64,000 nucleotides of DNA, from positions 124,001 through 188,000 of the IMG/VR virus record IMGVR_UViG_3300032116_000004; one strand, written 5' to 3'. The translations under genes and the position numbers were made by a program. This document shows, in pieces, positions 5,718-46,399 of the stretch (within the stretch, counting starts at the first letter, position 1; every line of letters begins with the position of its first letter). The notes under the pieces are model-generated. The model made no database searches. It saw only the letters and a program-made list of their open reading frames with translations, and had not been told where the DNA came from.

Positions 5718-5720
5718 ACT

Positions 5721-25999: not shown

Positions 26000-26003
26000 T
26001 TTT

Positions 26004-30361: not shown

Positions 30362-31882
30362 ATGAAAAAATTAGTGATCATACCAGGTGGATTCCACCCT
30401 TATCATGCCGGGCACAAAGCCTTGTATGATGCCGCACGTGAAGCGTTTCCTTCGGCCGAAGTGTATGTGGCGGCCACAGACGATACCACTGGTCGTCCAT
30501 TTCCATTCAAGACCAAGAAGTTCCTGGCACAGCAAGCCGGCATCCCCAGCAACAGATTCATCCAGGTAAAATCACCTTTCAGCGCAGAAGAAATAACCCA
30601 ACATTTTGATCCCAACGAAACACAGTTGATTTTTGTTCGTTCAGACAAAGATCGCGATCAGAATCCTCAGCCAGGCCAGCCTGGACAGATAATCACACGT
30701 GGTCCTCGTAAAGGACTGAGCCCTTATTTACAGCCCTACCGTCGCAACGGTCTCGAACCCATGAAAGATCATGCTTACATGACTTATCTGCCCACTGTGC
30801 AGTTTGGTCCGGGCATGACGTCAGCCACTGAAATCCGTGCCAAATGGCCCGGCATGGATCCCAAACAAAAAGCCGCTCTGGCTGGTGTGCTGTATCCCTT
30901 GGCAGCCGACAATCAAGCAAAGATAGCCAAGATCGTGGAAATACTAGACACAGTGATGGGCGTCGGGAAAGACGTCAATGAGGAACAACTCAATGAACTA
31001 GATCTTTTCAATAAACGCACAGACTATATCAAAATGGGCAATGATCAGTTTATTGACATAGGATATCGTGTGACTGATAGATTTGGTCAGCCAGGCAACC
31101 CTCTGGTCACTAATTCCAAAATTCGCTGGGTGCCACCGCAAGAGGCTGTGACTCTTAAACTCAATGATCGTGTGACTGATGTTAGTCGCAAAATGGATTC
31201 GGACAATGTATTCACTCTTGATTCTAGTCTGATTCCACCAAACGTGAAATCTCAGATAGCACAATGGATCAAGACCCACCCTGCACCAACCACTGAAGCA
31301 GTGCTGGTAAATGATCCAGACGCTGGCCATCAGATCATACCTGACGGTGGCATGGGCACCTGGGACGAGGCCAGCATGGTCAACAATCTCGCCCGTAAGT
31401 TTGCCGACATGGTCAACATGGTCAAAGGCAAAAACTACTCTGGACTGCAATATGCACTTTACAAAGGTGGCGTGGTCAAGAGCTTGGTTGACGCCTTGGC
31501 AGAATACGAGCGTTTCATGCAGAAACAAGGTCGCAGACCCATAGCACGTGGCCGAGAAGTTGACATGAGCCAACTCAATCTCGCAGAAAAAATCCGGATG
31601 AGGATGCCTGTGGAAGAATCTCCCGACTATATCGAAGAAGGTGATGTGGTTCCGTTTCCGCCCTCGGCCACTCCGCCCGAGGGCTATGAGCAAGCCAAAC
31701 AATTGGCCTTCAAAATAGTAGACATAGCCAAAGACGAAAAGATACAGGATCCTGGTCCTATGTTGGCTCCACTGCGCAGAGATCTGCAAATGCTGGGCTG
31801 GCGCATGAGGATGGACAACAGCGGAATGCGCTTGATCCATACCCGTTCAAATTGGAACACCATCATTGACCCAATGAAATAA
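30362..31882 (+). CDS. HxGH nucleotidyltransferase (cytidylyl/NMNAT-like) fused to further modules
   Basis: PGGFHPYHAGH, SATEIR; downstream modules separated by VNEEQLNE, TTE, LAE, VEE, IEE. Confidence 0.75.
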   Translation: MKKLVIIPGGFHPYHAGHKALYDAAREAFPSAEVYVAATDDTTGRPFPFKTKKFLAQQAGIPSNRFIQVKSPFSAEEITQHFDPNETQLIFVRSDKDRDQNPQPGQPGQIITRGPRKGLSPYLQPYRRNGLEPMKDHAYMTYLPTVQFGPGMTSATEIRAKWPGMDPKQKAALAGVLYPLAADNQAKIAKIVEILDTVMGVGKDVNEEQLNELDLFNKRTDYIKMGNDQFIDIGYRVTDRFGQPGNPLVTNSKIRWVPPQEAVTLKLNDRVTDVSRKMDSDNVFTLDSSLIPPNVKSQIAQWIKTHPAPTTEAVLVNDPDAGHQIIPDGGMGTWDEASMVNNLARKFADMVNMVKGKNYSGLQYALYKGGVVKSLVDALAEYERFMQKQGRRPIARGREVDMSQLNLAEKIRMRMPVEESPDYIEEGDVVPFPPSATPPEGYEQAKQLAFKIVDIAKDEKIQDPGPMLAPLRRDLQMLGWRMRMDNSGMRLIHTRSNWNTIIDPMK

Positions 31883-31933
31883 TCGTGCTACAATCGCTAG
31901 ACTAAATATACGCACATTATTTTAGAGGACTCC

Positions 31934-32878: not shown

Positions 32879-32889
32879 ATAGATGTGCC

Positions 32890-35800
32890 ATGGACATCAA
32901 TGAATTAGACAGTTACCGCCTGTCGGACGCGGTAAAGTTTCACACTGAATTAAACCCTGCACTCTGGGACGGCGATCGCATGCGTCCCGAAGTGCGTGAG
33001 GCCCTGATCAAAATCGCCGATGATTTCCGCGAATTCCTGGGCATCAGTGATCTCGCAGTGGAAGATATCACTGTGAGTGGATCCAATGCCGCATACACCT
33101 ATACTCCCCATTCCGACATAGATCTGCATCTCTTAGTAGATTTCAGCAAGCTCAATCCCGACCAAGTATATCAAGAGCTGTTCAACGCAAAGAAATATCA
33201 ATACAACGATCAACACGATATAAAAATCAGAGGCTATGACGTCGAGCTCTATGTGCAAGACGCAGGCAAGCCTGTTCGCAGCCTTGGTGAGTATTCCATC
33301 GTGCGTGACGACTGGACTCGTATTCCCGTGCGACGCCAAGGCAATCTCGACGAAAAATCAACCCAAGCAAAATACGAAAAACTCAGAGACCTGATTGAGC
33401 TTGCACTGACCAGCGATGATCTCCAAACAGTCACCAATCTCACTGACGTGATAAAACGATATCGGCAGGCCGGATTGGATGAACATGGCGAGTTCGGACC
33501 TGAGAATCTGGCCTACAAGATCCTGCGCACACAGGGCTTGGTCAAGCGATTGTTTGATCATCGTGCCAGCCTAGAAGATTCAAAACTGAGCCTGGCTGAG
33601 CGCCGAAAGAAAAAGAAAAAATCCAAAAAGAAATTCCGTTACGGTTCTTTTGGTGGATACTATTATCCAGGCTATGGTTATTATGGTCAGACCGGCGACG
33701 CCGAAGCCGCAGACGGTGGTGGTGATGGGGGCGGAGAAAGTGTGCGCGAAGACACAGAGATCAAAGTCCAAGCCAAGAGCATACCCATAGACAAAGTGGT
33801 GCGACGCTTCGTGCATTTTGCCGCGCACTATCTCAAACTAGATCAACTGCCTCGCATCATCTTGCAAGGTGAAAAATTTACCAAGCACATCCATTCAATG
33901 GGCCATTATGTAGATGACAAGAAAATGATCGAGGTGGCCACGCACGGTCGCCACATCATGGACATCCTGCGCACCGTGGCACATGAACTCACACATTACA
34001 AACAGCATGAACGCTTGGGCCGAGACATGCCTGACACAGCGGGTCGCACTGGCAGTCCCTACGAAAATGAAGCCAATGCCAAGGCCGGCATAATTATGCG
34101 CCATTTCCAAAATCGTTATCCAGAATTCTTTGGCGCAGAAACAGTGGAAGAACAACTCACGGAGTTTTCACCCGCACAGTCTGGTGCTACCGGTGAAGAC
34201 GATGACATCGAAGCACACTATGGTGATCAGACTCCACCAGGACCAGAATTCCCTCCTACCATGCCCGCAGGCACTGTGAGGGTAGATGTGAGCGATGTGT
34301 ATGACTGGTATAAACTGGGACAGCATATCTCCAACATGAAAGGCTTGGGCAAGCATGACTTTGGTGCAGGTCCGCCCAGTTCCATAATCTCGTTTGGCGA
34401 TGAAGAAACTGAACATAAGTTTATCAAAGATCTTGAAGCCACGGGCCTAGATGTCACTGACATCGATCCCAAGGATCCCCGGCAACCCGCTGGCATGCGA
34501 AAAGTCAAGACCGATCCTACCTACAATGTAGACGAGGGTCTAGGAAAAACACTGGCCACTGGTGCCTTGGCAGCCGCTGCCGCACTGGGACAGCCAGCAC
34601 AGGCACAGGATGTGGGGCGCACGGCCTATCAGATAGGCAAGCAGATATATCAACCCTCGGGCATATTCACCCGTGCAGGTGCTGAAGAAGAACTCAAGGG
34701 CATAGCCCGAGACATGGCACGTGGCAGCAGAGAAATACGTGTGGGTGGCAAGTTGATCTATGGTGGCCCTAGACCGCAAGGTGAGCGTGTTGCGTCAAAC
34801 GCCGCGGCTGCATCAGCAGAAGAAGCCTATCGACAGGCCCTGGAAAATGCCATCAACCGCGCACAACAACAGCATGGTCCTATCACACTGGGCCCCGGCG
34901 GTTGGAAAGTTGTGGATTATGAAGCCGACCAGATGGGCAACACATTCCGTGCCATGGTGGCCATAGAAGGTCCTGCACCGCGCAGAGAATCCATACAGAC
35001 GCCTGTGAGTCGCAGCCAAAAGGATCGCGAAGATTACTACAAGTTTGTCATGGGCAAGGCCACGACAGGTCGTCCTTTGACACGCTCGGAACAAGAATTC
35101 ATCAAGACCTATCGTCTACAACAGAAAATACAAGGTAAAGTGGCCGAAGATGCCGCAGGATACATCCCCACCAAGAAGCAGGCCCGAGATCCACGTTTCA
35201 AAACAGCACTCACAGTGGACATCCGACCTGGACAGGTAGGCAAGGAAGCCAACAAGTTGGGATTGCAGACCGACAGCCAAGGACGTCCTGCACTGTTGAT
35301 CAAGAACTTGGCCAATGCCTTGAAGGAATACAAAGAGACTGGAGTGTTTGAAGCAGTCAATCCCGTGACTCCTGCCGTGCCAGACCCACGACAAAAAATA
35401 GATCCATATCAAGGGCAGGCCCAGAAACGACAAAGACCACAAGACCGACCAAAGAAAAAAACACCATCGAGCACTGGCAATCCAAGATTCGTCAATATCG
35501 AAGTCAAAGAAGACGAAGATCTCATGGAAGTCAAGATGTCGCCCGGGGCCTTGGAAGCCTGGGCACGATCACCTGAAGCCGAAGGTATACGTGCTGGCTT
35601 TGAAGCAGAAATGATCTTCCGTGATACCCGCCGTGACGAAGATGAAGACTACGATCAAGAACCTGACTACGACTACGATGAGCGGCCCGATGACATCGAC
35701 CATGTCATAGACTTCTTCTCCAATGATGACTATGGCTATGGTTTGAGTCGCCAAGGCGCCAGGAATCTACGAGAAAGCCTGTGGGAAGCCTATACGGAAT

Positions 35801-37989
35801 GGGTGGATGAACAGATCAGCGAGAGTTGGGACGAGAATGCCGAAGATCAAGTGCGTGACTACATGGAGACCAACGTCTGGGACGATGACTCAGAACGCGA
35901 AAGCCGTATCCAAGACAAGGTCGAGGAAATGTTTGGTGACGAGGCAGTGCCCGCTATAATGAAAGCCGGCGACAGCGCACCAAGATTCACCCGGAGTTCA
36001 GATCAAGATGAATATGCACAATCCAACGAATTATACCAAAAATTCAAGCAAGCATCCGATGCGGCCTACGAAGCATTCGAAGAAGAAATAACCAATGAGT
36101 TTGAAAGCCAAGGCGAATATTACGATGCGGCTCGCGAATATTATTGGGACATGACGCGAGAAGGCGGCGAGTTTGACGAGCGCGACTTCCTCCGTGACCG
36201 CTATGGTTACATGACTGACATCGCCAACGAAGAAAGCCTTGACTGGCCCTACTGGAGCGGCGGTTCCTCTGGCACTGGCAGCCGTGAGTGGAGCGATATT
36301 GGTGACAGTTTACAGCGTGCCATTGACATGCCAGTGAGAGTGAGTTCAGGCTATCACTCAACCACACGCCGGCCCGGTCTATGGATCATCGAACCCGACG
36401 GCAGCCTAGATCCCGATGATCGTGATGATGAAATGGGCCTGGAGATCGTGTCTCCGCCCTTGCCCTTGCCAGAAACCCTGGAAAAATTAAAACAGGTCAT
36501 TGAGTGGGGTAACTCAGAAGCCGATGCCTACACCAACTCGTCCACCGGCTTGCACATGGGCATCTCTATACCCTATGTGGGCGGTGACGTAGACTATGTC
36601 AAATTGGTGCTGTTCATGGGCGACGAATATGTGTTAGACAAGTTTGGTCGTGCTTCCAACACCTATGCGGCATCGGCCATGGAAAAACTACGCAACAGCA
36701 TGCGAGTGGCACGCCGCCGTGGCACCTTGACTGAAGCCCGATTTGATCCCATGGGTGCGCTAGAACTGGTGCAGAAAAATCTCATTGAACTGGCTGCTCG
36801 TTATGTGCAGAACGGTGTGGGAGACAGCAAGTATACTTCCGCACACATCCAGGACGGCTACATCGAGTTCCGTAGCCCTGGTGGTGATTATTTGAGCATG
36901 GAGAGTCGCGGTGAATATGATGACATCCGCAATACCATGTTGCGTTTTGCTCGGGCCATGCAGATCGCAGGCAGCCCCAGCCTGGAACGTCGAGAGTATG
37001 CCAAGAAACTCTATAAACTGATCTCACCTGGTGCACAGGATGACGGTCTCAAGTTATTTTCTCAATTTGCCGCTGGCACCATAACTCCAGAAGAACTCAA
37101 GAAACAGTGGGCCAATGCTGTGCTCCAGAAAGAGATACCCACCACTGGTCAAGAAGAGTGGGAAGTGTATGATCAGCGCAAGTCTGGTCCGGATGGAGTG
37201 ATCGACTCTTTCTATGCTGATGAATATGACACTGCCTATATGAAAGCCCAGGACAAGTATGGCAACACACCCGAATGGCGCAATTTGGACATCCGTAAGA
37301 AACAACCCTGGTATGATGTCAAGGATTCCTACGGTGACATCATACTCACTGTGAGAGCCAGAGATTTTGACAGCGCCAAACAAAAGGTCCAGGCAGAGTA
37401 TGGGGATCGACTCTCCGACGATTGGGAGATATATCGCAGGCCCGATGACACTCCTGAGCCAGAAAAGAAACTGAGTCCACGTGCTCAAGTGGCCAAACGC
37501 CTCAAAGAACCCAAGGTCACACCGGCAGTGGCCGCAGACAATGAGCGAGATCGTGAACAGATACAGGCCCGCATAGGTGAGCCTCAACCCGCAGGCGCAG
37601 TATCAGACGCCGGACACTATCGTGTGATGTGGGATGAGCGCAGGAATGGAACAGTAACCAGTGATTCTTTGAACATTGATGCTGCCAGTGCCGAAGCAGC
37701 CAGACAGAATGTGCTAGATGCGTTGCAAATGCAAGGTCGAGATGTCATACAGATATCTGCACACCCCCAACAGCCACCAGCCTGGCGGCGCAATCGAGAA
37801 CCTGTTGCCACATCAACACAGGGCGAATTCTCAGGACAGTGGCAAGTTCGTAATGCCAATACCGGAGAAGTGGTTTACACATTCAGTGGCATAGGCAACA
37901 GTCAAGGCGATGCCAATCGTGTGGCACAACAATGGGTCCAACGCACTAGATTTGATGATCCTGTAGAAGTCGTTCCAGAGTTGAGATAA
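32890..37989 (+). CDS. 1699-aa multidomain polyprotein: Pol-beta NTase, HExxH peptidase-like, signal-peptide module, amidoligase, others
   Basis: SGSNA..DIDLH..ELYVQD; AHELTH..ENEANA; GFEAEM/EPDGSL/LEIVSP/STGLH/IEFR. Confidence 0.8.
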   Translation: MDINELDSYRLSDAVKFHTELNPALWDGDRMRPEVREALIKIADDFREFLGISDLAVEDITVSGSNAAYTYTPHSDIDLHLLVDFSKLNPDQVYQELFNAKKYQYNDQHDIKIRGYDVELYVQDAGKPVRSLGEYSIVRDDWTRIPVRRQGNLDEKSTQAKYEKLRDLIELALTSDDLQTVTNLTDVIKRYRQAGLDEHGEFGPENLAYKILRTQGLVKRLFDHRASLEDSKLSLAERRKKKKKSKKKFRYGSFGGYYYPGYGYYGQTGDAEAADGGGDGGGESVREDTEIKVQAKSIPIDKVVRRFVHFAAHYLKLDQLPRIILQGEKFTKHIHSMGHYVDDKKMIEVATHGRHIMDILRTVAHELTHYKQHERLGRDMPDTAGRTGSPYENEANAKAGIIMRHFQNRYPEFFGAETVEEQLTEFSPAQSGATGEDDDIEAHYGDQTPPGPEFPPTMPAGTVRVDVSDVYDWYKLGQHISNMKGLGKHDFGAGPPSSIISFGDEETEHKFIKDLEATGLDVTDIDPKDPRQPAGMRKVKTDPTYNVDEGLGKTLATGALAAAAALGQPAQAQDVGRTAYQIGKQIYQPSGIFTRAGAEEELKGIARDMARGSREIRVGGKLIYGGPRPQGERVASNAAAASAEEAYRQALENAINRAQQQHGPITLGPGGWKVVDYEADQMGNTFRAMVAIEGPAPRRESIQTPVSRSQKDREDYYKFVMGKATTGRPLTRSEQEFIKTYRLQQKIQGKVAEDAAGYIPTKKQARDPRFKTALTVDIRPGQVGKEANKLGLQTDSQGRPALLIKNLANALKEYKETGVFEAVNPVTPAVPDPRQKIDPYQGQAQKRQRPQDRPKKKTPSSTGNPRFVNIEVKEDEDLMEVKMSPGALEAWARSPEAEGIRAGFEAEMIFRDTRRDEDEDYDQEPDYDYDERPDDIDHVIDFFSNDDYGYGLSRQGARNLRESLWEAYTEWVDEQISESWDENAEDQVRDYMETNVWDDDSERESRIQDKVEEMFGDEAVPAIMKAGDSAPRFTRSSDQDEYAQSNELYQKFKQASDAAYEAFEEEITNEFESQGEYYDAAREYYWDMTREGGEFDERDFLRDRYGYMTDIANEESLDWPYWSGGSSGTGSREWSDIGDSLQRAIDMPVRVSSGYHSTTRRPGLWIIEPDGSLDPDDRDDEMGLEIVSPPLPLPETLEKLKQVIEWGNSEADAYTNSSTGLHMGISIPYVGGDVDYVKLVLFMGDEYVLDKFGRASNTYAASAMEKLRNSMRVARRRGTLTEARFDPMGALELVQKNLIELAARYVQNGVGDSKYTSAHIQDGYIEFRSPGGDYLSMESRGEYDDIRNTMLRFARAMQIAGSPSLERREYAKKLYKLISPGAQDDGLKLFSQFAAGTITPEELKKQWANAVLQKEIPTTGQEEWEVYDQRKSGPDGVIDSFYADEYDTAYMKAQDKYGNTPEWRNLDIRKKQPWYDVKDSYGDIILTVRARDFDSAKQKVQAEYGDRLSDDWEIYRRPDDTPEPEKKLSPRAQVAKRLKEPKVTPAVAADNERDREQIQARIGEPQPAGAVSDAGHYRVMWDERRNGTVTSDSLNIDAASAEAARQNVLDALQMQGRDVIQISAHPQQPPAWRRNREPVATSTQGEFSGQWQVRNANTGEVVYTFSGIGNSQGDANRVAQQWVQRTRFDDPVEVVPELR

Positions 37990-38573
37990 TGCGATCTCAG
38001 GAATTTATCTCAGAAGTAAACTTTCCCGATGAGTTATCAGTGAGCGACCGCATACAAAACTATTTTTTTGATCGCGGCTATCAGTTGGCCGGCGAAGGAC
38101 GCGATCAGATAGCCTTGTTGAGTCCCAGAAACACCATACTCAAAGTCTTGGGCATAGGTGAAGATGAGCGCGAACAGATAGTAAAAAACTACGTGAAATT
38201 TTTCGTCAACAATCAGAACGATCCTTATATTCCCAGGATTTACAACGTGGGTGATTTTGAAGTAGATGGAGAAACATATTTTGTGTATGAGATGGAATAT
38301 CTAGACTATGTGGCCAACGAAGAAGCCACGCTGGACTATCTAGAAAATCTCATGTCAGCAGTGGCACGCGGACGTGATCGTGTGCAGGAGTTCATGAAGA
38401 ACAATCCTGCTCCTAAAGAACTGGATCGTGATGACATCGTGGGTTTAGTAAATACTACGCTGAAATTAGAACAAGCCTTGGGCGGCCAGGCACCATTGGA
38501 TCTCAGCCAGATAGAGAACCTTCGCCGCCGCAGTGATGGACATCTAGTGATAATGGACCCCTACAGCCTATGA
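37989..38573 (+). CDS. Protein-kinase-like protein with MRxxEF leader
   Basis: AGEGRD, ILKV, IPRIY, MEYL, DLSQIEN, VIMDP. Confidence 0.55.
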   Translation: MRSQEFISEVNFPDELSVSDRIQNYFFDRGYQLAGEGRDQIALLSPRNTILKVLGIGEDEREQIVKNYVKFFVNNQNDPYIPRIYNVGDFEVDGETYFVYEMEYLDYVANEEATLDYLENLMSAVARGRDRVQEFMKNNPAPKELDRDDIVGLVNTTLKLEQALGGQAPLDLSQIENLRRRSDGHLVIMDPYSL

Positions 38574-38968
38574 GAGCACAAGAATTATTAGTCGAAATCA
38601 CTCGCAGAGACTTCTTGCGTGGTGCAGGTGCCGTGGCTGGCTCTGCGGCATTGGGATCGGCACAGGCTCAATCCGATCGGAACATCACCAAGATTATCAA
38701 CTCGGCTGCCATGTTGTGGGTGATATGTAAAAAACACTATCCCAACAACCCCAACACCCGAGAACTAGAAGAAACAGTCAAACGGCTTTGGAAAAGTAAA
38801 AGCGACAATGCTGTGGCATTTAATGAAGAATACACAGCAATGAAAGAAAGATTGGCAGATTGGGAAGCCCGAGATCCTGCCGGCTATGCCAACTTTGTCA
38901 ACCGATATATGATGAACTTTGCCAAGATTAAAGCCAACTTGGAAACATTACCAGAGATGATGATATGA
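38570..38968 (+). CDS. Leader + twin-arginine signal protein
   Basis: MRAQELLVE then ITRRDFLRGAGAVAGSAALGSAQA. Confidence 0.75.
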   Translation: MRAQELLVEITRRDFLRGAGAVAGSAALGSAQAQSDRNITKIINSAAMLWVICKKHYPNNPNTRELEETVKRLWKSKSDNAVAFNEEYTAMKERLADWEARDPAGYANFVNRYMMNFAKIKANLETLPEMMI

Positions 38969-40809
38969 GAGCACAAGAATTCGCTAATTCCAAACTAGTC
39001 ATCTTTGACATCGACGATACCCTGGTCAACACAGACACCAAGGTCAATGTGGTGCGAGATGGCCGGATCGTGAAGCAACTCAACAGTCACGATTTCACGC
39101 ACTATCACTTACAGCCCGGTGAAGAGTTTGACTTTGGTGCTTTCCGTGATGCCCGCGAATTCTACACACAGGCCCGGCCCATACCCGGCATGATCCGCCA
39201 ACTCAAACAAGACATCGCCACGGGCAACAAAGTGATCATGCTTACTGCCCGCTCGGACTTCAATGACCGAGAAGTTTTCCTGGACACATTCCGCCAGTAT
39301 GGCATTGACATGTCAAAAGTGCATGTGTATCGTGCTGGTAACTTGAACATCAAAGCCGCCACAGAAGAAAAGAAAAAGATCATACTACAACATCTCTTGG
39401 GCAAAGAACACTACGACAAGATCATCATGTATGATGATTCTGTGCCCAATTTAAATGCTTTTCTTAGCCTCAAACAAGATTATCCATGGTCTAAGTTCTA
39501 TGCCTGGCACGTGGATCCATCAGGAAAGGCAGACGAGTATCATAGGACTGATATCCGTGTCACAGAAGTCAGTGCGGATCGCTTGCAACAGTATCTAAAT
39601 CGCGCTGGACAACAGGTTGATCGCAGACAGGAAAGAATGGCCCAGGCCCGTGAGCGACTCAACAAGAGTTATGAAATATACCATGCAGACCGTCCTGCTG
39701 GCTCCAGCCAGATTGTAGATCGTTTTGAATCTGACACCCCTGCGGAAGCCCAACGTTATTATGAAAAGTTTATTCAGAACTACGAAAGTGATCGAGACTT
39801 TGATTTACAACTGCGTCGAAGCACAGGCATCGTGGAAGATTCATTCCGAGGCATCGATATCTCCATGGAAAAGGAAGATGATGAAATCATGGTCCAGGCG
39901 TCGGCGGGTGGCAAGCAGTTAGGGTCAGTGTTGTTTGTGGAATACGATGGCTATCTCATGCCACAGGATCTTGAAGTAGATGAACGATTCCGTGGGCAAG
40001 GTATCGCCCAGGCCATGTATGACTATGTGAAAAGCCTGGGTTATCGCATACGCAGGAGTGGCCAGCAGACCGACGCAGGTTCTGGATTCTGGAGAAAACA
40101 TCGTCCAGAACAGAATGTCTGGGAACAAAGTGTGGCGAAAGGCGATAAAATGAGCCTCATTAATCTAGATCAATCCTTGGCCGACACACCATCGGTATGG
40201 AAAAAATTCATAAGTTTGTTGCCACCACAATTGGCCCGAGAGTTTGTGGATGAGCGTCCAAGACCCGATCAAGACGATATAGACTTTCTCACTCCTTTGC
40301 GTCTGGTCAGTCCGCAGCCTGTATCAGTGCGTGTGGCCGACTTATTGCGTCATCCAGAGAATCAAGGAACCATTGGTAGATCGCCCGACGATGTGGTAAC
40401 AGCAGTAAACCAACGATGGGGTCTCAAGATCCCGTCAGGTAAGAAATATGATCCCAATCCCGCACGATATCGTGCCTATGCCCAGATGGCACCCGGCACA
40501 GCCAGTCCTTCAGTCATGGCCGACGGGGTGATCCTGTTTGGAGCAGGCAGATTCGTGGCCGCGGCTCTGCGTGGTGATGAAACCATGCGTGTGTGGAGCA
40601 TGACAAGAAAGCAAGGCGTGAAGGAAGTAGAGGAAAACTTTGCTGATGGTCGAGTAAAGGGCAAGAGCCGCCCGGGTCGTGTGAAACGTGCGGGTGCTAG
40701 TTGTAGTGGATCAGTCACAGATCTGCGTGCCCGTGCCAAGAAGTATGGTGGAGAACGGGGCAAAATGTATCATTGGTGCGCCAACATGAAGTCAGGTCGG
40801 AAGAAATAA
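38965..40809 (+). CDS. Polyprotein: HAD phosphatase + GNAT + ParB-like + basic Cys module
   Basis: FDIDDTL/LTARS/YDD; VDERFRGQGIA..QTDAG; ILFGAGR; NFADG..HWCAN. Confidence 0.75.
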   Translation: MRAQEFANSKLVIFDIDDTLVNTDTKVNVVRDGRIVKQLNSHDFTHYHLQPGEEFDFGAFRDAREFYTQARPIPGMIRQLKQDIATGNKVIMLTARSDFNDREVFLDTFRQYGIDMSKVHVYRAGNLNIKAATEEKKKIILQHLLGKEHYDKIIMYDDSVPNLNAFLSLKQDYPWSKFYAWHVDPSGKADEYHRTDIRVTEVSADRLQQYLNRAGQQVDRRQERMAQARERLNKSYEIYHADRPAGSSQIVDRFESDTPAEAQRYYEKFIQNYESDRDFDLQLRRSTGIVEDSFRGIDISMEKEDDEIMVQASAGGKQLGSVLFVEYDGYLMPQDLEVDERFRGQGIAQAMYDYVKSLGYRIRRSGQQTDAGSGFWRKHRPEQNVWEQSVAKGDKMSLINLDQSLADTPSVWKKFISLLPPQLAREFVDERPRPDQDDIDFLTPLRLVSPQPVSVRVADLLRHPENQGTIGRSPDDVVTAVNQRWGLKIPSGKKYDPNPARYRAYAQMAPGTASPSVMADGVILFGAGRFVAAALRGDETMRVWSMTRKQGVKEVEENFADGRVKGKSRPGRVKRAGASCSGSVTDLRARAKKYGGERGKMYHWCANMKSGRKK

Positions 40810-40817
40810 GTAATATC

Positions 40818-41000
40818 ATGCGAGCAAGAGAACTCACAGGACACAAGTGGATCACCACTATAACCATAAGCAATCCTGACTATACCGGCCGGATTGATGT
40901 GTCAGTGTATGCCCACAATCAAGCACAGGCCCGACAACTGCTCAAAGCGCAGTATCGCATCCAGGATCATCACATCGGATCCATCAGGAAGGCGCCATGA
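40818..41000 (+). CDS. Small protein with MRAREL leader
   Basis: Leader motif; ATGA overlap with next gene. Confidence 0.65.
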   Translation: MRARELTGHKWITTITISNPDYTGRIDVSVYAHNQAQARQLLKAQYRIQDHHIGSIRKAP

Positions 41001-41314
41001 GAGTCGCAGAATTCATCGCAGAAGATCTGTCAGCGGCTGGCTTCCGTATCCATGTTAGTCCACACCTGGATAATCGTGCAGAAAATCGCGGCATATCCAT
41101 GGCCACCATCTTGGGCATACTCAACAGATTGGATCGGGTGCGCAGACACATCCGTGGATTTGAGCCCAACTCACAGTTCAATGTCTATGACAGCCAACAC
41201 AACATACATCTTGGCATGATGCGATCAGGATTCGATCCAGATAAACTGTTGTTGAACACAGTGTATCACAACGAAAACTACCACGGGCGCAATCCCGTCA
41301 TAAAGGTTCGATAA
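40997..41314 (+). CDS. Possible BECR/DUF4258-like ribonuclease with leader
   Basis: MRVAEFIAE; SPHLDNRAENRGIS ... LNTVY. Confidence 0.45.
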   Translation: MRVAEFIAEDLSAAGFRIHVSPHLDNRAENRGISMATILGILNRLDRVRRHIRGFEPNSQFNVYDSQHNIHLGMMRSGFDPDKLLLNTVYHNENYHGRNPVIKVR

Positions 41315-41901
41315 TGAGAGCACAGGAGTTCCAGGAAGTGGCACTGCTGACCCGGGTCAAAGGCAAGGGCGAGGAGCCCAGCAATCTGCCCAAGTTTGGA
41401 CGGCCCATACTGCCCAAAGAAGAGATCAAATACCTTGGGAAAAAAGTCGGCAACATGGGCCGCTATGAGATCTGGCGAGACTATGTGGGTAGCCAGGTCA
41501 GTTACATCCTGGTAGATCCCCAAAGCCGCAGAGCCATAATCCATGCCTTTGGCAGCAGATATCAGAGAAATCCCAACTCATTCATAGTGGCAGGCCTGTA
41601 TGCCGCACCCGGCAATCCTGTGCGTGCCAGCCAGTTCTATCATGCCTTGATCACGGAATTAGGACTGGATCTCATTTCTGATATCAAGCAGAGTCCCGGA
41701 GGCTACAAAGTGTGGCGTGAATTACAGCAAAGATTTCGTGACGTGAATGTATATGGCTATGATACCAAGCGCAACGAACTGCTGAACGTCACTGCACGTG
41801 ATGAAGAAATGACACATGTGCCCGCTGAAATCGTGCGCAAGGGCGGGCCCGATGTCAAAGACGTGGCCCGCAACATCAGGCTAGTGGCCACAGCAAAGTG
41901 A
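41314..41901 (+). CDS. GNAT-like protein with leader
   Basis: MRAQEFQE; ASQFYHAL...LISDIKQSPGGYKVWREL. Confidence 0.5.
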   Translation: MRAQEFQEVALLTRVKGKGEEPSNLPKFGRPILPKEEIKYLGKKVGNMGRYEIWRDYVGSQVSYILVDPQSRRAIIHAFGSRYQRNPNSFIVAGLYAAPGNPVRASQFYHALITELGLDLISDIKQSPGGYKVWRELQQRFRDVNVYGYDTKRNELLNVTARDEEMTHVPAEIVRKGGPDVKDVARNIRLVATAK

Positions 41902-41934
41902 TCGCCAGCAGGCGCACACGCCGGTAAATATCGC

Positions 41935-42225
41935 ATGAAATCAACATTCGTAAAATTAAACGTAGATCTACACTGCGATTGGAAAAAGACTCCGCCGCCC
42001 TATAGACTCTATGTCAACGATGAACTGTTCACTGAACGCACCTACATCTGGGGTGGCACACAGTATCTCCAAGAAATCATCAGCCTCAGCGCACCGCCTG
42101 GACGCTACAGCCTACGTATCGACAATCTGGGCGATCCTGACTGCAAATTCAAACTGCGCAATCTCTCAGTAGAAACAGGATCAGCCACGGTGCTGGATTC
42201 TAAAACCGTGGAGATCACCCAATGA
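41935..42225 (+). CDS. Hypothetical protein
   Basis: TAAATA 4 nt upstream. Confidence 0.7.
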   Translation: MKSTFVKLNVDLHCDWKKTPPPYRLYVNDELFTERTYIWGGTQYLQEIISLSAPPGRYSLRIDNLGDPDCKFKLRNLSVETGSATVLDSKTVEITQ

Positions 42226-42404
42226 GAGCCCGAGAATTCGTCACAGAAACCACGGTCAGCGGTGCCATAGCCACGGTTGCACAGCCCATGATGGCCGTGC
42301 TCGCAAGAGAACCTGCACAAGCACCCGCTGATAAATATAAAACTACTTCTAGGAAGCCGGCACCAGATGTTAACCGACGATTTAAAAACTCTTTTAGCAA
42401 GTAA
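42222..42404 (+). CDS. Small protein with MRAREFVTE leader
   Basis: Leader motif; ATGA coupling. Confidence 0.65.
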   Translation: MRAREFVTETTVSGAIATVAQPMMAVLAREPAQAPADKYKTTSRKPAPDVNRRFKNSFSK

Positions 42405-42807
42405 CTTTGCATATTATCTCAAGGCACAGATGTTCCATTGGAACGTGGAAGGCCCTGATTTCGGGCAACTGCACGAATTTTTCGGCGAAGTCTACGCTGA
42501 TGCCTACGGCGCTGTGGACCAGATAGCCGAATACATCCGCACCCTGGATGACTACGCTCCCGGAAGCCTAGAGCGTTTTTCAGAACTCAGCGAGATCCCT
42601 GGACAGACCAAGATTCCCCGAGCCCGGCTCATGCTGGAAGAATTGCTACAAGATACCGAAACCATGAAAGCCATGGTCATGCGTGTGTTTGAATCTGCAC
42701 AGGCCGAAGGTCGCGAAGACATCGCTAACTTCATGGCCGAACGCCAAAACAGTCATGGCAAGTATGCCTGGCAGACACGCTCATTCCTCAAGGATCAACG
42801 AGCATGA
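42367..42807 (+). CDS. dps: Dps-family mini-ferritin
   Basis: HWNVEGPDFGQLHEFFGEVY...DQIAEYIR...HGKYAW. Confidence 0.9.
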   Translation: MLTDDLKTLLASNFAYYLKAQMFHWNVEGPDFGQLHEFFGEVYADAYGAVDQIAEYIRTLDDYAPGSLERFSELSEIPGQTKIPRARLMLEELLQDTETMKAMVMRVFESAQAEGREDIANFMAERQNSHGKYAWQTRSFLKDQRA

Positions 42808-43739
42808 GCAATGACATAGCCCGCATACTGACCAAGTTTGATCAACTCAACGAAGGGTTGAACCAACAACAGACTGCCGTGAAGCAGATGCCTGCACTGT
42901 TTAAAATGAAATCACAGGGTCCTGTGTTGGGCGGAGATCCCAACCGCCCTGCGCCCAGCAAAGGTTACTATTTTGGTGGTGAGGGCGAGGAACCCACTGT
43001 GAATCGCGGTGGTTACAATAAACTACGAGATCGCACAGATTATCTTGACAAGCGTGATATCTTGTTCCGCCAGCTCACTCCTGGCATAGATCCACAAACC
43101 AGAGAAGCCATCAAAGATCGATTGGCCCAATTAGAAAAAGCTGCCGAGATGTCTGGGCTGACAGAAAACACCGAAGACAATCCCATGAGAGATGCAGTGC
43201 TTGGGCGCATCCGTCGTGGCAGATTGGATCTCATAGAAAAATATGGTCTGGACCATGTGCTGTCCGCTGTGGATGATGTCACAGACGGTGATGATGATTG
43301 GTACGAAATTGGATCCAGTGATGTCAGCGCCTATATCAAGCGTGTGGAAGATCTCTTGCGTGATCACTATGGTAGCCGTGACGAAGTAGTTGAAAGCGCC
43401 ACTACCGAAGACGTGATCTCCACTGTTAAGAAAAAACTGGGCGACTATCTACAAGACATAGCCACGCAGATCAAGACAGATCCTGATCTCAAAGACAAAA
43501 TGCCCCAGGACATGGATCGGATCTCTCCTGTGGTCAAGACCATCACCACAGACGATGGCAAAGAAATCAAGATACACGGCAACGAAGATGACGGATTCCG
43601 CATCACTATAAAGAACAAGGCCTTGTCATCCGAATTTGACAATCTTGACGAAGCTGTGATGGCCTGCGAGATGTATTGTGCTCGCCGACGCAACATGCAA
43701 GAACAAACGTCAAACAACGACTATCTGGAAGAACGATAA
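42804..43739 (+). CDS. Modular hypothetical protein with xxE junctions
   Basis: QLNE, GLTE, VVE junctions. Confidence 0.7.
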   Translation: MSNDIARILTKFDQLNEGLNQQQTAVKQMPALFKMKSQGPVLGGDPNRPAPSKGYYFGGEGEEPTVNRGGYNKLRDRTDYLDKRDILFRQLTPGIDPQTREAIKDRLAQLEKAAEMSGLTENTEDNPMRDAVLGRIRRGRLDLIEKYGLDHVLSAVDDVTDGDDDWYEIGSSDVSAYIKRVEDLLRDHYGSRDEVVESATTEDVISTVKKKLGDYLQDIATQIKTDPDLKDKMPQDMDRISPVVKTITTDDGKEIKIHGNEDDGFRITIKNKALSSEFDNLDEAVMACEMYCARRRNMQEQTSNNDYLEER

Positions 43740-46399
43740 TGAATCTGTTTAATCTAATTGAAAATACCACAGGCGGCTACGACAATCTCCGCGCACTGTT
43801 ACAGGCCGTGAGCACCCGCTCGCCAGCCGATCTCAACATAGGTGGTGAACCCATCACCCTGGACTACATGGAAGCTAACTTCCTCAACGGTATCTATCGA
43901 GCATATTTGAAAGCCGGACGCCAAGAAGAATTCATCCAGGACCTGGGCGATGCACGGCGCTTTGACATGCACATGAAGAAACTGCGCGATCTCATCGCTA
44001 AACAGAAATCCTTCCGTGGATCAGTTCCGGGTCAACGTGGTGTCACAGGCGATGTTCCTGCTGGTGTGATGGAAGGTCTGGAAGCCTTGGAAGAGATAGC
44101 CATGCAGGATCCCAACAATCCCACAGATCAAAATGCCGGCAAATTGAACTGGACTCGCATGATCCAGGACTACATGGGCAACAAACCCTACACTGAATTT
44201 GAATTTGGCACGGATCGTCCGCTCACTCTGTATCGCACACAGATCTATGCCATACTCAAAGCATTTGGCAACATGAAACCACAGCAGAAACTCAACATCA
44301 TCCTCAACACCTTTGGCAACAAAGTGGCTACCGTGGAATACCTTGACAAACTGCGTGCCAAGGGCATGATGCCCAAAAAAGTGCCTGCCTATGTGGCGCC
44401 TGGCACAGAGGCTCCTGCACCGGGACAGATGAGCCTTCCGGGCATAGACATGCCTCGCATCAAAGAAGCTCAAAAAAAAAGTCCGCAAGAATTAGCTAGA
44501 GACACGGCTGTTTCGGCCAAGGTCCAACGTGCGTTCCAACTGGCCAGGGCTCGTCAACCTGCCGCTGCCTCTGACATCGAAGCCTTTGTCAAAGATGAAA
44601 TAGAACGTGGCGAAGAACTAGCACAACAGGTCGGTCAGTTACAGCAAGACAATGAACAACAGAGCCAGCAGATAGCACAACTGACCAAGGCCGTGAGCCA
44701 GCAAGCCAAGGCCGAACCTGAACCAAAGCCACCTGCACCATCAGCACCTGCCGCACGGGCACCCACGGCACCTGCCAAACCAGAAAAAGAACCCACTGCC
44801 AAAGCAGAGCCCGAGGCCCTGCCCAAGGACAAAGAAGAACCCAAGACCGAACCCAAGGCCGAACCTGCACCGCAGACACAACCGGCTCCAGCCAAGGCTC
44901 GCAAGCCCAGGGCTAAACCTCGTGCCAAACCACAAAAGGCCCCCGGGGAATTGCCGCCCGTGGATACCACCATCCAGATGCCACCACAGCAGATACCCGA
45001 TCAGCGACCTTCAGCGCAGATATTGCAGTTTCCTGGCGGCAAGAAAGATGAAGTAGGCGCTGCCATGCAAGGCCTGGATCTTGGTGATTTGCCACGTGCC
45101 GCGGGACAAAACGAAAGCGTGAGAGTCACTGTGAGAGGCAATCCGTTGTTTGAAGGCAAGGATGGCACTGTGAAACAACGCATCGCCGATGACTTCTTCC
45201 TGGTAGATGTAGATGGATTTGGATCACATGCTTTCCATGTCAGCAAATTGGTGTTTGAGATGCAAACCCGACTGGATCGCTTCAATATTGACAGACCCAT
45301 GTTGCCATCCGGCGTGGCCAAGGTCCAATACGCCCGTGACAACAACATGTATGATGATGCCCGCATACAAGAAGCCTTGCCTGACAAGGCCATGGCTGTG
45401 TTGAAAAATCTACAGCAACAGCAACAACAACCAGAACCTGCAATTGATCTCAATACACCTGCTGGTCCACGACGTGGTCGTCCTACCAATGCCCAACGAG
45501 CACAGCGCCACGAAGAGTTCTTGACTCTCCGACGTCGCATAGCATTGTTGGACGAGTTGATCCAGATGAAAGAACAGATTGATCGCTTGTTCCTCAAGGC
45601 ACAGAATGTGCGTGGCGGTATCTATCCTGGCTTGCAAGCAGACATTGAGATGGAAGAACTGTATCCTGTGCCAGAAACAGATCGCCAATTCCAAGATCTC
45701 CGAGACAAATACACCAAAGACTTAACCGCACTGCAAAAGTTCTTGGCCATGAAGAAGGCAGTGTATCGTGAAGACGAAGATTCGATGTTGGGCGAAAGCA
45801 CTGCCTTGGTGCGCTTGAAACAAGCACGTCAGGCACTGAGTCAACAAGGTGTGGCGGAAGGCACCGACGACGTCAAAAAGCGAATGTCCAAGTTGGAAGC
45901 ACTGGCCTTGGCTGCAAATCGTGCCGGTGATGATGCAAAATGCAAAATGTATCAGCAAAAGATTCAATCACTCAAACAAAAATTATCTAGAGATATGTCA
46001 ACAGGTGTAGCGGAAGCAGTTACAGATGTAAAGGCTGGCATGGCTGAAATATATCATCGCCTGGCTCCCAAAATAGAACGCCACCGAGACAGTTTCCTTG
46101 CCGGGCAACTGTATGATGAGTTGGAAAACTATGCTGAACTACACGGTGCCGAAGGCGAGTTCAAAAGGATGATGGCCACGGCCAGGAACAGTGCCCACAT
46201 GGAATATGATACCAACCCGGGTGGTTTCCAAAACTGGTTCTGGTTCTTGCCATTTGAAAAACAGTTGGATGAAAAACAAGATGCTTGTTACCGCAAGGTA
46301 AAAAGTCGTTACAAAGTATGGCCTTCGGCTTATGCATCGGGTGCCTTGGTCCAGTGCCGCAAGAAAGGTGCTGACAACTGGGGCAACAAGAAAAAATGA
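43739..46399 (+). CDS. Large modular polyprotein with Pro/Lys/Glu linker and GVAE junctions
   Basis: MNLFNLIE leader; QGVAEG, TGVAEA, QLDE; C-terminal ACYRKVKSRYKVWPSAYASG module. Confidence 0.75.
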   Translation: MNLFNLIENTTGGYDNLRALLQAVSTRSPADLNIGGEPITLDYMEANFLNGIYRAYLKAGRQEEFIQDLGDARRFDMHMKKLRDLIAKQKSFRGSVPGQRGVTGDVPAGVMEGLEALEEIAMQDPNNPTDQNAGKLNWTRMIQDYMGNKPYTEFEFGTDRPLTLYRTQIYAILKAFGNMKPQQKLNIILNTFGNKVATVEYLDKLRAKGMMPKKVPAYVAPGTEAPAPGQMSLPGIDMPRIKEAQKKSPQELARDTAVSAKVQRAFQLARARQPAAASDIEAFVKDEIERGEELAQQVGQLQQDNEQQSQQIAQLTKAVSQQAKAEPEPKPPAPSAPAARAPTAPAKPEKEPTAKAEPEALPKDKEEPKTEPKAEPAPQTQPAPAKARKPRAKPRAKPQKAPGELPPVDTTIQMPPQQIPDQRPSAQILQFPGGKKDEVGAAMQGLDLGDLPRAAGQNESVRVTVRGNPLFEGKDGTVKQRIADDFFLVDVDGFGSHAFHVSKLVFEMQTRLDRFNIDRPMLPSGVAKVQYARDNNMYDDARIQEALPDKAMAVLKNLQQQQQQPEPAIDLNTPAGPRRGRPTNAQRAQRHEEFLTLRRRIALLDELIQMKEQIDRLFLKAQNVRGGIYPGLQADIEMEELYPVPETDRQFQDLRDKYTKDLTALQKFLAMKKAVYREDEDSMLGESTALVRLKQARQALSQQGVAEGTDDVKKRMSKLEALALAANRAGDDAKCKMYQQKIQSLKQKLSRDMSTGVAEAVTDVKAGMAEIYHRLAPKIERHRDSFLAGQLYDELENYAELHGAEGEFKRMMATARNSAHMEYDTNPGGFQNWFWFLPFEKQLDEKQDACYRKVKSRYKVWPSAYASGALVQCRKKGADNWGNKKK

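What the first reader, a model, noticed from the sequence alone, without database searches (positions are those of the whole stretch)
30362..46399. Polyproteins of unrelated domains joined at x-x-E cleavage-like junctions
Seen: the large ORFs (30362, 32890, 38965, 42804, 43739) are strings of unrelated modules whose boundaries fall at [LVI]-x-E motifs. The 1699-aa protein reads NTase -SLAE- basic/Gly-Tyr patch -SVRE- HExxH peptidase -VEEQLTE- module -NVDE- signal-peptide module -KVAE- ... -DLME- amidoligase. The 614-aa protein reads HAD -RVTE- module -GIVE- GNAT -VWE- ParB-like -EVEE- basic module. Inference: one tag packages a polyprotein that the head protease cuts into separate effectors, a polyprotein strategy for delivering many enzymes. 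It resembles phage polyvalent proteins but with explicit processing sites.
Basis: partly seen in the sequence, partly recalled or inferred. Interest (0 to 1): 0.85.

Follow-up and report, generated by a model that had tools for sequence, protein, structure and literature searches.

The report
Tagged, cut-site-delimited phage effector polyproteins
A giant freshwater phage strings unrelated enzymes into long proteins whose modules are separated by a short hydrophobic-x-Glu signal matching the T4 head-protease cut site, which suggests that the enzymes are packed into the capsid as polyproteins and cut apart, though no cleavage or packaging has been shown.

Summary
Ten neighbouring genes carry an N-terminal tag, M-R/K-x-x-E-F/L-(Phi-x-E), which resembles the T4 capsid targeting sequence. 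The large ORFs are chains of modules that relatives shuffle, lose, or encode as stand-alone tagged genes.

The same module follows either a tag ending in Phi-x-E or unrelated sequence ending in Phi-x-E. For one module, 99 distinct upstream contexts all have Glu at P1, and 94 have V/L/M/I at P3.

Homology breakpoints sit on Phi-x-E sites three to five times more often than chance in four of the five ORFs; the 311-aa ORF fails this test. AlphaFold puts its lowest confidence at the junctions. About 18 internal Sec, Tat or lipoprotein-type signal peptides begin just after a Phi-x-E, which makes sense only if cleavage frees them.

My best reading is polyproteins cut after Glu by a gp21-type prohead protease and delivered with the DNA. 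Three things remain unshown:
- Cleavage and packaging are untested.
- I could not locate this phage's own protease.
- The "ParB-like" label is unsupported.

This is a new variant combining T4 CTS/gp21 processing with polyvalent proteins.

The parts
32890..37989 (+). 1699-aa polyprotein with a degenerate tag (MDINEL). Proposed cut sites lie after E237, E287, E425, E549, E700(?), E753 and E880.
   Evidence: Modules are permuted or stand alone in relatives, and the junctions lie in low-pLDDT stretches.
32890..33600 (+). Module A (aa 1-237), a nucleotidyltransferase that ends in LSLAE.
   Evidence: Pfam NTP_transf_2 scores 21.1 bits, at the cutoff, and phrog_36119 matches. Stand-alone 235-237-aa genes, some starting MRLQEF, end at the LSL motif. 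LSLxE is kept in 26 of 26 relatives.
33601..33750 (+). Basic and Gly/Tyr-rich patch (aa 238-287) that ends in ESVRE.
   Evidence: pLDDT is below 50 throughout. ES[VIL]xE precedes the HExxH module in about 20 of 27 relatives.
33751..34164 (+). Module B (aa 288-425), a zincin-like HExxH metallopeptidase.
   Evidence: HExxH plus a downstream Glu are conserved in alignment A3, and pLDDT exceeds 90. Pfam hits are only sub-threshold: M78 at 0.0056 and MPTase-PolyVal at 0.013. A stand-alone tagged 126-aa gene exists, L054_11645.
34165..34536 (+). Module C (aa 426-549), function unknown, ending in PTYNVDE.
   Evidence: It sits in different positions in relatives, and in L031_18226 it lies between a tag plus KWS module and a basic module.
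34537..35148 (+). Module D (aa 550-753). It opens with a Sec-type signal-peptide-like segment (aa 550-573, window 34537-34608) directly after NVDE. A sub-module starts near aa 701.
   Evidence: Relatives have Sec, Tat or lipobox-like segments 3-5 residues after Phi-x-E.
35149..35529 (+). Module E (aa 754-880), the 'SGYIP' module, function unknown.
   Evidence: Glu precedes it in 24 of 24 relatives whatever lies upstream. The protein atlas gave no lead.
35530..37149 (+). Module F (aa 881-~1420), an amidoligase that starts VKMSP after DLME.
   Evidence: Pfam Amidoligase_2 scores 32.4 bits against a cutoff of 22. L-x-E before [VIL][KN]MSP is seen in 19 of 19 relatives.
37150..37986 (+). C-terminal region G (aa 1421-1699), small repeated domains of unknown function.
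   Evidence: Relatives share only parts of it, with matches beginning at q1558, q1627 or q1645 and running to q1699.
37989..38573 (+). Tagged gene (MRSQEFISE|VNFPDEL), kinase-like.
   Evidence: phrog_15752 at 1e-4. In relatives the same module is internal and follows VAE, LTE, LEE or INE.
38570..38968 (+). Tagged gene (MRAQELLVE|) with a twin-arginine signal directly behind the tag.
   Evidence: Pfam TAT_signal covers residues 9-29 at 28.8 bits against a cutoff of 22.7.
38965..40809 (+). 614-aa tagged polyprotein: HAD (1-201), module H2 (202-291), GNAT (292-387), module H4 (388-557) and the basic NFADG module (558-614).
   Evidence: The only pLDDT<50 segments are 197-202, 388-393 and 552-557.
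40818..41000 (+). Small tagged gene (MRAREL...).
40997..41314 (+). Tagged gene (MRVAEFIAE|), the closest match to the T4 CTS.
41314..41901 (+). Tagged gene (MRAQEFQEV).
42222..42404 (+). Tagged 60-aa gene (MRAREFVTE|).
30362..31882 (+). 506-aa protein with no MRxxEF tag. An N-terminal cytidylyltransferase-like module is followed by variable C-terminal modules.
   Evidence: In relatives the C-terminus is a KWSxKYK module after DY[IL]EE.
42804..43739 (+). 311-aa protein with a different N-terminal motif (MSNDIxxIL). Its modularity is weak.
   Evidence: The boundary test is not significant.
43739..46399 (+). 886-aa protein with a second N-terminal motif class (MNLFNLIE, or MxxxDLFE in relatives), internal GVAE sites, and a C-terminal basic Cys module.
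46396..46929 (+). Tagged gene (MRYREILE) made of small basic Cys-containing modules.
   Evidence: The same modules occur in T4-like cyanophages.
47330..47677 (+). Tagged gene (MRVTDIVRE).
47664..48194 (+). Tagged gene (MKASEFVSE|KWSRKYK...).

Best explanation
The island at about 30-48 kb encodes proteins destined for the phage head. A 6-9-residue N-terminal tag, M-R/K-x-x-E-F/L, usually followed by Phi-x-E, would play the role of the T4 capsid targeting sequence.

Modules are joined head to tail through a Phi-x-E delimiter, where Phi is V, L, I or M. A glutamyl-specific protease, most likely the gp21-type (Peptidase_S77/U9) prohead protease, would cut after the Glu. That would remove the tag and separate the modules inside the prohead.

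The pieces would then be ejected with the DNA. They include a nucleotidyltransferase, a zincin peptidase, an amidoligase, a HAD phosphatase, a GNAT, a kinase-like protein and small basic Cys modules. Some pieces carry a newly exposed Sec, Tat or lipoprotein signal.

Shown here:
- The tag.
- The delimiter and its equivalence to the end of the tag.
- Module shuffling.
- Disordered junctions.
- Internal signal peptides placed just after delimiters.

Inferred: the cleavage itself, the identity of the protease, and packaging and ejection.
For: 1. The tag is real and local. Ten window genes carry it. Strict-tag ORFs occur at 1.23 per 10 kb in family loci against 0-0.05 elsewhere. Conservation is at protein level only.

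2. The T4 record gives ipII/ipIII MKTYQEFIAE. The window has MRVAEFIAE, MRSQEFISE and MKASEFVSE.

3. The same module follows either a tag or unrelated sequence, and both end in Phi-x-E:
- NFADG module: 26 of 26 in IMG/VR relatives and 77 of 77 in 50%-identity representatives. Across 99 distinct upstream contexts, P1 is Glu in 99 of 99 and P3 is V/L/M/I in 94 of 99, while P2 and P4-P10 are unconstrained.
- KWSxKYK 19 of 20, DLRKWF 10 of 10, kinase-like 6 of 6, SGYIP 24 of 24, VKMSP 19 of 19.

4. Whole internal tags are absent; only Phi-x-E persists at junctions.

5. Homology breakpoints are enriched at Phi-x-E sites.

6. AlphaFold models place the junctions in disorder. In the 614-aa model the only pLDDT<50 segments are three of the four junctions, and pTM is 0.43. 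In the 1699-aa mid-region all five junctions lie in or at disordered stretches.

7. About 18 internal signal-peptide-like segments begin 3-10 residues after Phi-x-E. A Pfam-significant Tat signal sits directly behind a tag.

8. gp21 cuts after L/I-x-E, and the phiKZ and SPN3US proteases cut after S/A-x-E (PMC9026906, PMC5694885).

9. Cultured relatives by PolB carry PF03420 proteases: K64-1 at 42% PolB identity and Vibrio phage 2.275.O at 43%. Jumbo phage groups 1 and 2 are reported to have gp21 orthologues (PMC7824862).

10. The small basic modules also occur, again after Phi-x-E, in a T4-like cyanophage protein encoded between gp16 and gp17. That genome has gp21.
Against: - There are no proteomic or biochemical data.
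- The phage's own prohead protease was not located.
- The island lies among replication genes, between the Clp ATPase and PolB, not among head genes.
- The 1699-aa and 506-aa proteins lack a canonical tag.
- The Phi-x-E could formally be read as the first three residues of each module.
- Every genome in the family also carries an HExxH peptidase that could do the cutting.
- HSP-end statistics and junction counts come from related sequences, so they overstate the number of independent events.
Confidence: 0.58

Rival explanations
1. The polyproteins are cut at Phi-x-E, but by the embedded or stand-alone zincin HExxH peptidase, as proposed for the MPTase domains of polyvalent proteins. This could happen in the cytoplasm, in the head, or after injection. 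The prohead protease would play no part.
For: - An HExxH module with conserved catalytic residues follows the NTase in nearly all relatives, and it also exists as a tagged 126-aa gene.
- It gives weak hits to MPTase-PolyVal, M78 and Tox-MPTase3.
- Iyer et al. 2017 predict autoproteolytic release by such domains.
- No gp21 homologue was found for this phage.
Against: - What is conserved is P1 Glu and P3 hydrophobic, with a free P1' (N, K, V/I, D, G, A/S). That matches the published gp21 and gp175 specificities. From my own knowledge, zincins usually read P1'.
- Polyproteins without an HExxH module (614, 886 and 506 aa) use the same delimiter.
- The tag resembles the T4 CTS, which ends at a gp21 site.
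Confidence: 0.15
2. These are uncleaved multidomain 'polyvalent' proteins. On this view the Phi-x-E at junctions is a relic of fusions between formerly separate tagged genes, or simply a favoured linker, and has no processing role.
For: - Junctions are disordered linkers, as in any multidomain protein.
- Some polyvalent proteins, such as the N4 vRNAP and ArdC, are transferred unprocessed.
- There is no direct evidence of cleavage.
Against: - A neutral relic would not keep P1 Glu in 99 of 99 distinct contexts and P3 hydrophobic in 94 of 99 while P2 and P4-P10 drift. It would also not lose the MRxxEF part every time.
- Internal Sec, Tat and lipoprotein signal peptides hundreds of residues into a protein, each placed just after the motif, have no obvious use without cleavage.
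Confidence: 0.12
3. The tag and the delimiter serve another process, not capsid packaging. One possibility is regulated activation or turnover in the infected cell, for instance cleavage exposing N-degrons for the adjacent phage ClpA/B-like ATPase. Another is targeting to a different compartment.
For: - A Clp-family ATPase with a Clp_N domain and a DnaJ gene lie directly upstream of the island.
- The island is not in a head-gene block.
- Cutting after the first Glu of MRAQE|F would expose Phe. From my own knowledge, Phe is a bacterial N-degron.
Against: - The tag closely resembles the T4 CTS, including the Phi-x-E end.
- P1' residues at junctions are mostly not N-degron residues.
- Homologous basic modules sit in the structural gene block of a cyanophage.
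Confidence: 0.1

Closest known systems
T4 internal proteins (IPI, IPII, IPIII, Alt), with a capsid targeting sequence and gp21 processing
   Same: Both have a short N-terminal leader that shares the Q/A-E-F-I-x-E core and ends in a hydrophobic-x-Glu site. Both sit on many diverse, fast-evolving small and basic proteins clustered in a variable island. Both have host-takeover-type cargo.
   Different: The phage here is a ~316-kb freshwater jumbo phage whose PolB is only about 42-48% identical to cultured jumbo phages. The leader is one residue shorter. There are 10 or more tagged genes in 10 kb. The delimiter is also used internally to chain up to eight or more unrelated modules (up to 1876 aa in relatives). 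Some cargo has signal peptides. Neither the protease nor packaging is demonstrated.
Polyvalent proteins of phages and conjugative elements (Iyer et al. 2017, PMC5512222)
   Same: Both place several unrelated enzymatic domains in one polypeptide of a phage (here NTase, zincin peptidase, amidoligase, GNAT and HAD). Both show combinatorial domain shuffling, and both are predicted to be delivered with the DNA.
   Different: Here the modules are separated by an explicit, conserved P3-P1 signal that also ends an N-terminal tag, and each module also exists as a stand-alone tagged gene. The passages of that paper that I searched propose autoproteolysis by MPTase domains and give no site motif. The context here is not next to virion genes.
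phiKZ, 201phi2-1 and SPN3US inner-body and ejection proteins, processed by gp175/gp245
   Same: These are jumbo phages with many head-internal proteins cut after Glu at a three-residue motif (S/A-x-E). Some long propeptides contain several candidate sites.
   Different: P3 there is Ser or Ala, while here it is V, L, I or M as in T4. Their propeptides are long and are discarded; in the papers I read they are not described as chains of separate enzymes. The phage lineages are unrelated.
Polyproteins of RNA viruses, cut by 3C/NIa-type proteases after Gln or Glu
   Same: This is the same logic: one translation product, a short site with P1 specificity, and the release of several enzymes.
   Different: It is an analogy only. 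This is a dsDNA phage, each module can also be a separate gene, and the presumed protease is a capsid maturation enzyme.

Membership tests
T4-type CTS-bearing internal head proteins | N-terminal leader of about 10 residues, similar to MKTYQEFIAE and ending in L/I-x-E | tested here: met
   The T4 leaders were read from NC_000866. The window has MRVAEFIAE, MRSQEFISE, MKASEFVSE and MRAREFVTE. Eight of 10 tagged genes have Phi-x-E at residues 6-9. The leader is one residue shorter than in T4.
T4-type CTS-bearing internal head proteins | A gp21-type (Peptidase_S77/U9, PF03420) prohead protease encoded by the same phage | tested here: inconclusive
   No hit in the window, in the flanks (L061, L306) or in about 1.6 Mb of family loci, by tblastn and by HMM. 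The head module lies outside the DNA I could reach. The protease is present in the cultured relatives K64-1 and Vibrio phage 2.275.O, and in a co-occurring contig of the same sample.
T4-type CTS-bearing internal head proteins | The leader is removed by cleavage after the Glu, and the protein is present in proheads and virions | not testable with these tools
   This needs virion proteomics or N-terminomics.
Polyvalent proteins (Iyer et al. 2017) | Two to fifteen unrelated conflict-type domains in one polypeptide of a phage or conjugative element | tested here: met
   NTase, HExxH and amidoligase occur together in one protein, and HAD and GNAT in another. The modules are independent.
Polyvalent proteins (Iyer et al. 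2017) | Presence of the hub zincin-like MPTase domain (Pfam MPTase-PolyVal) | tested here: inconclusive
   HExxH plus Glu are conserved and the domain folds confidently. However, PF18818 scores only 16 bits against a cutoff of 27.5, and Foldseek gave no significant match.
Polyvalent proteins (Iyer et al. 2017) | Gene context among late or virion genes | tested here: not met
   The island lies between a Clp ATPase and DnaJ on one side and PolB on the other. No head genes lie within 10 kb of the window ends.
   No Pfam hit at E up to 0.5. No PDB sequence hit below E 0.6.

The most novel reading that the evidence does not exclude
The Phi-x-E delimiter is a general cassette grammar. It would let an abundant family of freshwater jumbo phages load dozens of interchangeable effectors into the capsid behind a single tag. 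Capsid-protease cleavage would also unmask Sec, Tat and lipoprotein signal peptides. Proteins ejected into a newly infected cell would then be re-exported to its periplasm or membranes. As far as I could find, that route has not been described for phage-delivered proteins.
Probability: 0.3. Interest if true: 0.88.

Novelty: new variant of a known kind. Interest (0 to 1): 0.72.

Why it matters
If true, it gives a sequence rule (tag plus Phi-x-E delimiter) that predicts, from metagenomes alone, which proteins of uncultivated jumbo phages travel in the capsid and where they are cut.

It would also show polyprotein processing used by a dsDNA phage to deliver many enzymes. That would turn the 'polyvalent protein' idea into a testable mechanism with defined sites.

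The family is abundant: more than 600 IMG/VR contigs have PolB at 79% identity or above, and 2868 50%-identity clusters share modules with the 614-aa protein. The rule would therefore annotate thousands of proteins.

The tag and delimiter could also serve as a tool for packaging foreign proteins, as the T4 CTS does.

Tried and rejected
1. Hunt for this phage's own prohead protease. All of these failed to link a protease to the window's contigs:
- tblastn with T4 gp21 and the K64-1 protease, and an HMM of 10 gp21 homologues, against all held family DNA.
- Walking 10 kb left and right of the window.
- IMG/VR scans with a protease alignment, a major capsid protein and a second protease.
- Protein database searches. 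A head module was found in the same JGI sample (L310), but its GC content is 45% against 48% here, and nothing proves it is the same genome.

2. Phosso, the nearest cultured phage by PolB, has no tag island at the syntenic place.

3. Fold and function of modules B to E. Foldseek against PDB gave nothing significant, and the protein atlas gave only weak leads.

4. ParB-like call. No support.

5. Could the tag be a DNA-level repeat or regulatory element? Rejected. Upstream DNA is unrelated and codons vary synonymously.

6. Could internal junctions be read-through of adjacent tagged genes? Rejected. Whole internal tags are absent.

7. Cyanophage virion proteomics for the homologous basic protein. 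The supplementary table could not be searched.

8. tRNA and Rfam scans of the window found nothing.

9. Literature searches found no description of this tag-and-junction system.

Full report
**What the window is.**
All large genes run on the + strand. The window carries:
- a T4-type clamp loader and a family-B DNA polymerase;
- a ClpA/B-like ATPase, DnaJ, PhoH and two radical-SAM genes;
- tail-fibre and baseplate-like genes.

Nothing in the phage collection matches at DNA level. By PolB the nearest cultured phages are jumbo phages:
- Sinorhizobium phage Phosso, 48%;
- Vibrio phage 2.275.O and Agrobacterium phage Atu_ph07, 43%;
- Rak2-like phages such as 121Q, 42%.

The 1699-aa ORF is 100% identical in three IMG/VR contigs from different samples. 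One of these is 315,778 bp, and the window corresponds to its positions 124001-188000. The runs that hold the sequence are mostly lake and freshwater metagenomes. More than 600 IMG/VR contigs carry a PolB at 79% identity or above. This is therefore an abundant, uncultivated freshwater jumbo phage family.

**The tag.**
Reading the translations shows that the genes around the large ORFs begin with M-R/K-x-x-E-F/L, usually followed by a hydrophobic-x-Glu. The genes start at 37989, 38570, 38965, 40818, 40997, 41314, 42222, 46396, 47330 and 47664.

Strict-tag ORFs occur at 1.23 per 10 kb in 52 related loci. Elsewhere the density is 0-0.05 per 10 kb: in head-module loci of other jumbo phages, in PolB loci, in the window flanks and in the control phage loci. 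The strict pattern uses the 9-residue register of this family, so it cannot match T4's own 10-residue leaders. Upstream DNA is unrelated and synonymous codons vary, so the conservation is at protein level.

I read the T4 leaders from the T4 record. ipII and ipIII start MKTYQEFIAE, and ipI starts MKTFKEFTST. The window has MRVAEFIAE, MRSQEFISE and MKASEFVSE.

According to PMC9026906:
- the first 10 residues of IPIII are the capsid targeting sequence;
- residues 4 and 7 matter for targeting;
- residues 8 and 10 matter for processing;
- gp21 cuts after L/I-x-E.

The F, I and E of the window tags line up with T4 positions 7, 8 and 10.

**The modules.**
A blastp of the 1699-aa protein against the ORFs of 52 relatives shows its parts permuted, missing or split. 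Stand-alone genes exist:
- NTase genes of 235-237 aa. Some start MRLQEF, and they end at the LSL that precedes the first junction.
- A 126-aa HExxH gene starting MKSTEFLIE.
- HAD-plus-HExxH genes.
- A 240-aa gene made of a tag, a KWS module, module C and a basic module.

The other ORFs behave the same way. Against 1.84 billion cluster representatives, the 614-aa protein hits 2868 clusters. The limits of the matched stretches pile up at 197-205, 291-295, 387-394 and 553-560. Of the top 150 representatives, 106 start with the tag.

**The delimiter.**
For each module I mapped its first residue onto every non-redundant relative and read what lies upstream. The same module follows either an N-terminal tag or unrelated internal sequence, and both end in Phi-x-E. 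Examples:
- The kinase-like module follows FISE, FIAE and FISE (tags) or AVAE, GLTE, KLEE and PINE (internal).
- The 57-aa basic module begins NFADG in 66-aa genes such as MRAHEFVTE|NFADG. It has the same start after dozens of unrelated sequences.

Counts of Glu at P1:

| Module | Glu at P1 | Source |
|---|---|---|
| NFADG, IMG/VR relatives | 26 of 26 | |
| NFADG, representatives | 77 of 77 | |
| KWSxKYK | 19 of 20 | |
| DLRKWF | 10 of 10 | |
| Kinase-like | 6 of 6 | |
| SGYIP | 24 of 24 | |
| VKMSP (amidoligase) | 19 of 19 | |
| LSLxE after the NTase | 26 of 26 | |

A logo of 99 distinct 10-residue contexts upstream of NFADG gives:
- P1: Glu in 99 of 99.
- P3: V48, L19, M14, I13.
- P2 and P4-P10: nothing conserved.

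G[VMIL]AE occurs 152 times against 26 expected from composition. Whole internal tags (MRxxEF) are essentially absent. Junctions therefore keep only the three-residue signal.

**Objective boundary test.**
The table shows the share of HSP ends that lie within 3 residues of a Phi-x-E, against random positions.

| ORF | Observed | Random | Randomisations reaching observed |
|---|---|---|---|
| 1699 aa | 0.38 | 0.12 | 0 of 2000 |
| 614 aa | 0.44 | 0.09 | 0 of 2000 |
| 506 aa | 0.38 | 0.10 | 0 of 2000 |
| 886 aa | 0.38 | 0.12 | 0 of 2000 |
| 311 aa | 0.20 | 0.12 | 241 of 2000 |
| Control gene 31934 | 0.26 | 0.15 | 275 of 2000 |

The 311-aa ORF fails, and so does the control gene. The 614-aa protein has only eight Phi-x-E sites, and five of them sit at its four junctions. 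The HSP ends come from related sequences, so the randomisation overstates their independence.

**Structure.**
An AlphaFold model of the 614-aa protein, built on an alignment of module fragments (A2), has mean pLDDT 86.9 but pTM 0.43. Its only segments below pLDDT 50 are 197-202, 388-393 and 552-557. These are three of the four junctions. The fourth dips to 75-78.

In the model of residues 238-900 of the 1699-aa protein, the low-confidence stretches are 238-286, 426-452, 540-549, 700-707, 755-758, 819-867 and 873-880. Every proposed site (E287, E425, E549, E753, E880) lies in or at the edge of one.

Foldseek confirms the HAD and GNAT folds (AphA, MDP-1, the T4 PNK phosphatase and several acetyltransferases). 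It gives nothing significant for modules B to E. The 'ParB-like' label has no support.

**Internal signal peptides.**
Directly after NVDE549 the 1699-aa protein reads like a Sec signal peptide: a Lys, a hydrophobic core, then AQA.

A scan of all family ORFs found about 18 distinct internal segments of this kind in tagged polyproteins:
- Sec-type segments;
- Tat-type segments with RRGFL;
- lipobox-like segments with Cys.

Each begins 3-5 residues after a Phi-x-E, or up to about 10 residues for the Tat type.

The 38570 gene has a Pfam-significant Tat signal at residues 9-29, immediately behind MRAQELLVE.

A signal peptide buried hundreds of residues inside a protein has no obvious function unless a cut just upstream frees it. 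I regard this as the strongest argument that the delimiter is a cleavage site.

**Which protease.**
The motif (P1 Glu, P3 hydrophobic, free P1') matches gp21. It is close to the S/A-x-E of the phiKZ and SPN3US proteases.

Cultured jumbo phages related by PolB encode PF03420 proteases (K64-1 and Vibrio phage 2.275.O). [quoted passage not shown]

I could not find the protease of this phage. It is absent from the window, the flanks and 1.6 Mb of family DNA, and IMG/VR scans were truncated.

One complete head module has the order portal, 69 aa, 231 aa, Peptidase_S77, a 370-aa scaffold with 29 Phi-x-E sites, then Gp23. It occurs in a contig of the same JGI sample as one of the window's contigs. Its GC content is 45% against 48% here, and I cannot show that it belongs to the same genome.

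The rival protease is the polyprotein's own HExxH domain, as Iyer et al. proposed for polyvalent proteins.

**Supporting link to a cultured phage.**
The small basic Cys-containing modules occur in 242 T4-like cyanophage records. In S-MbCM100 they form a 441-aa chain encoded between gp16 and gp17. Two of the modules follow FQE and VNE, and that genome has gp21. I could not check its virion proteomics.

**Verdict.**
The system combines two known ideas, T4 CTS/gp21 processing and polyvalent proteins, into an explicit tag-and-delimiter grammar with stand-alone and fused forms. I found no description of it in the literature.

Noticed in passing
window 38570-38968: A 132-aa gene has the tag MRAQELLVE immediately followed by a twin-arginine (Tat) signal peptide, with Pfam TAT_signal above its cutoff. 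Relatives have tag-plus-Tat and internal Phi-x-E-plus-Tat arrangements.
   Followed up: partly
window 34537-34608 (aa 550-573 of the 1699-aa protein); also L005, L006, L009, L011, L013, L014, L020, L026, L029, L039, L045, L051: Internal Sec, Tat or lipoprotein-like signal segments begin 3-10 residues after a Phi-x-E, deep inside long proteins.
   Followed up: partly
window 43739-43765 and 42804-42840; relatives in L007, L008, L019, L024, L030: There are two further conserved N-terminal motif classes: MxxxDLFE/MNLFNLIE, and MSNDIxxILE/MRIxxLxE. The DLF motif also appears internally after QLNE in the 506-aa protein (aa 213-217).
   Followed up: no
L060:2782-4107 (Synechococcus phage S-MbCM100, gene 096): A T4-like cyanophage protein encoded between gp16 and gp17 is a chain of the same small basic Cys-containing modules (GKPKC, DACYxKVK...WPSAYASG, CWKGYKxxGMKKKG). 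242 cyanophage records match.
   Followed up: partly
window 25205-28695: A full DnaJ (J domain plus C-terminal domain) and a ClpA/B-like double-AAA ATPase with a Clp_N domain lie directly upstream of the island. Phosso has the Clp gene in the same place.
   Followed up: no
window 19461-20213 (- strand): A PhoH-like gene (Pfam 226 bits) sits on the minus strand, which otherwise carries no evident genes in this window. The surrounding 18.7-21.5 kb has only poor ORFs with TTG or GTG starts and no Pfam hits.
   Followed up: partly
window 2764-2982, 5139-6044, 62016-62852, and L306 downstream: Auxiliary genes are present: an IF1/eIF-1A-like gene, Fe/Mn superoxide dismutase, an Fe-S biogenesis protein, GTP cyclohydrolase I with PTPS, and sugar-nucleotide enzymes. 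This may indicate DNA or surface modification pathways.
   Followed up: no
L310:4963-7762 (co-occurring phage, JGI sample 3300008259): The head module has a 69-aa ORF that starts MRFNDIL, between the portal and the protease. It also has a 370-aa scaffold-like protein with 29 Phi-x-E sites.
   Followed up: partly
L024:15139-16332: This ORF appears to carry a duplicated tag (MRAQEFVTE followed by IRANEFESG).
   Followed up: no
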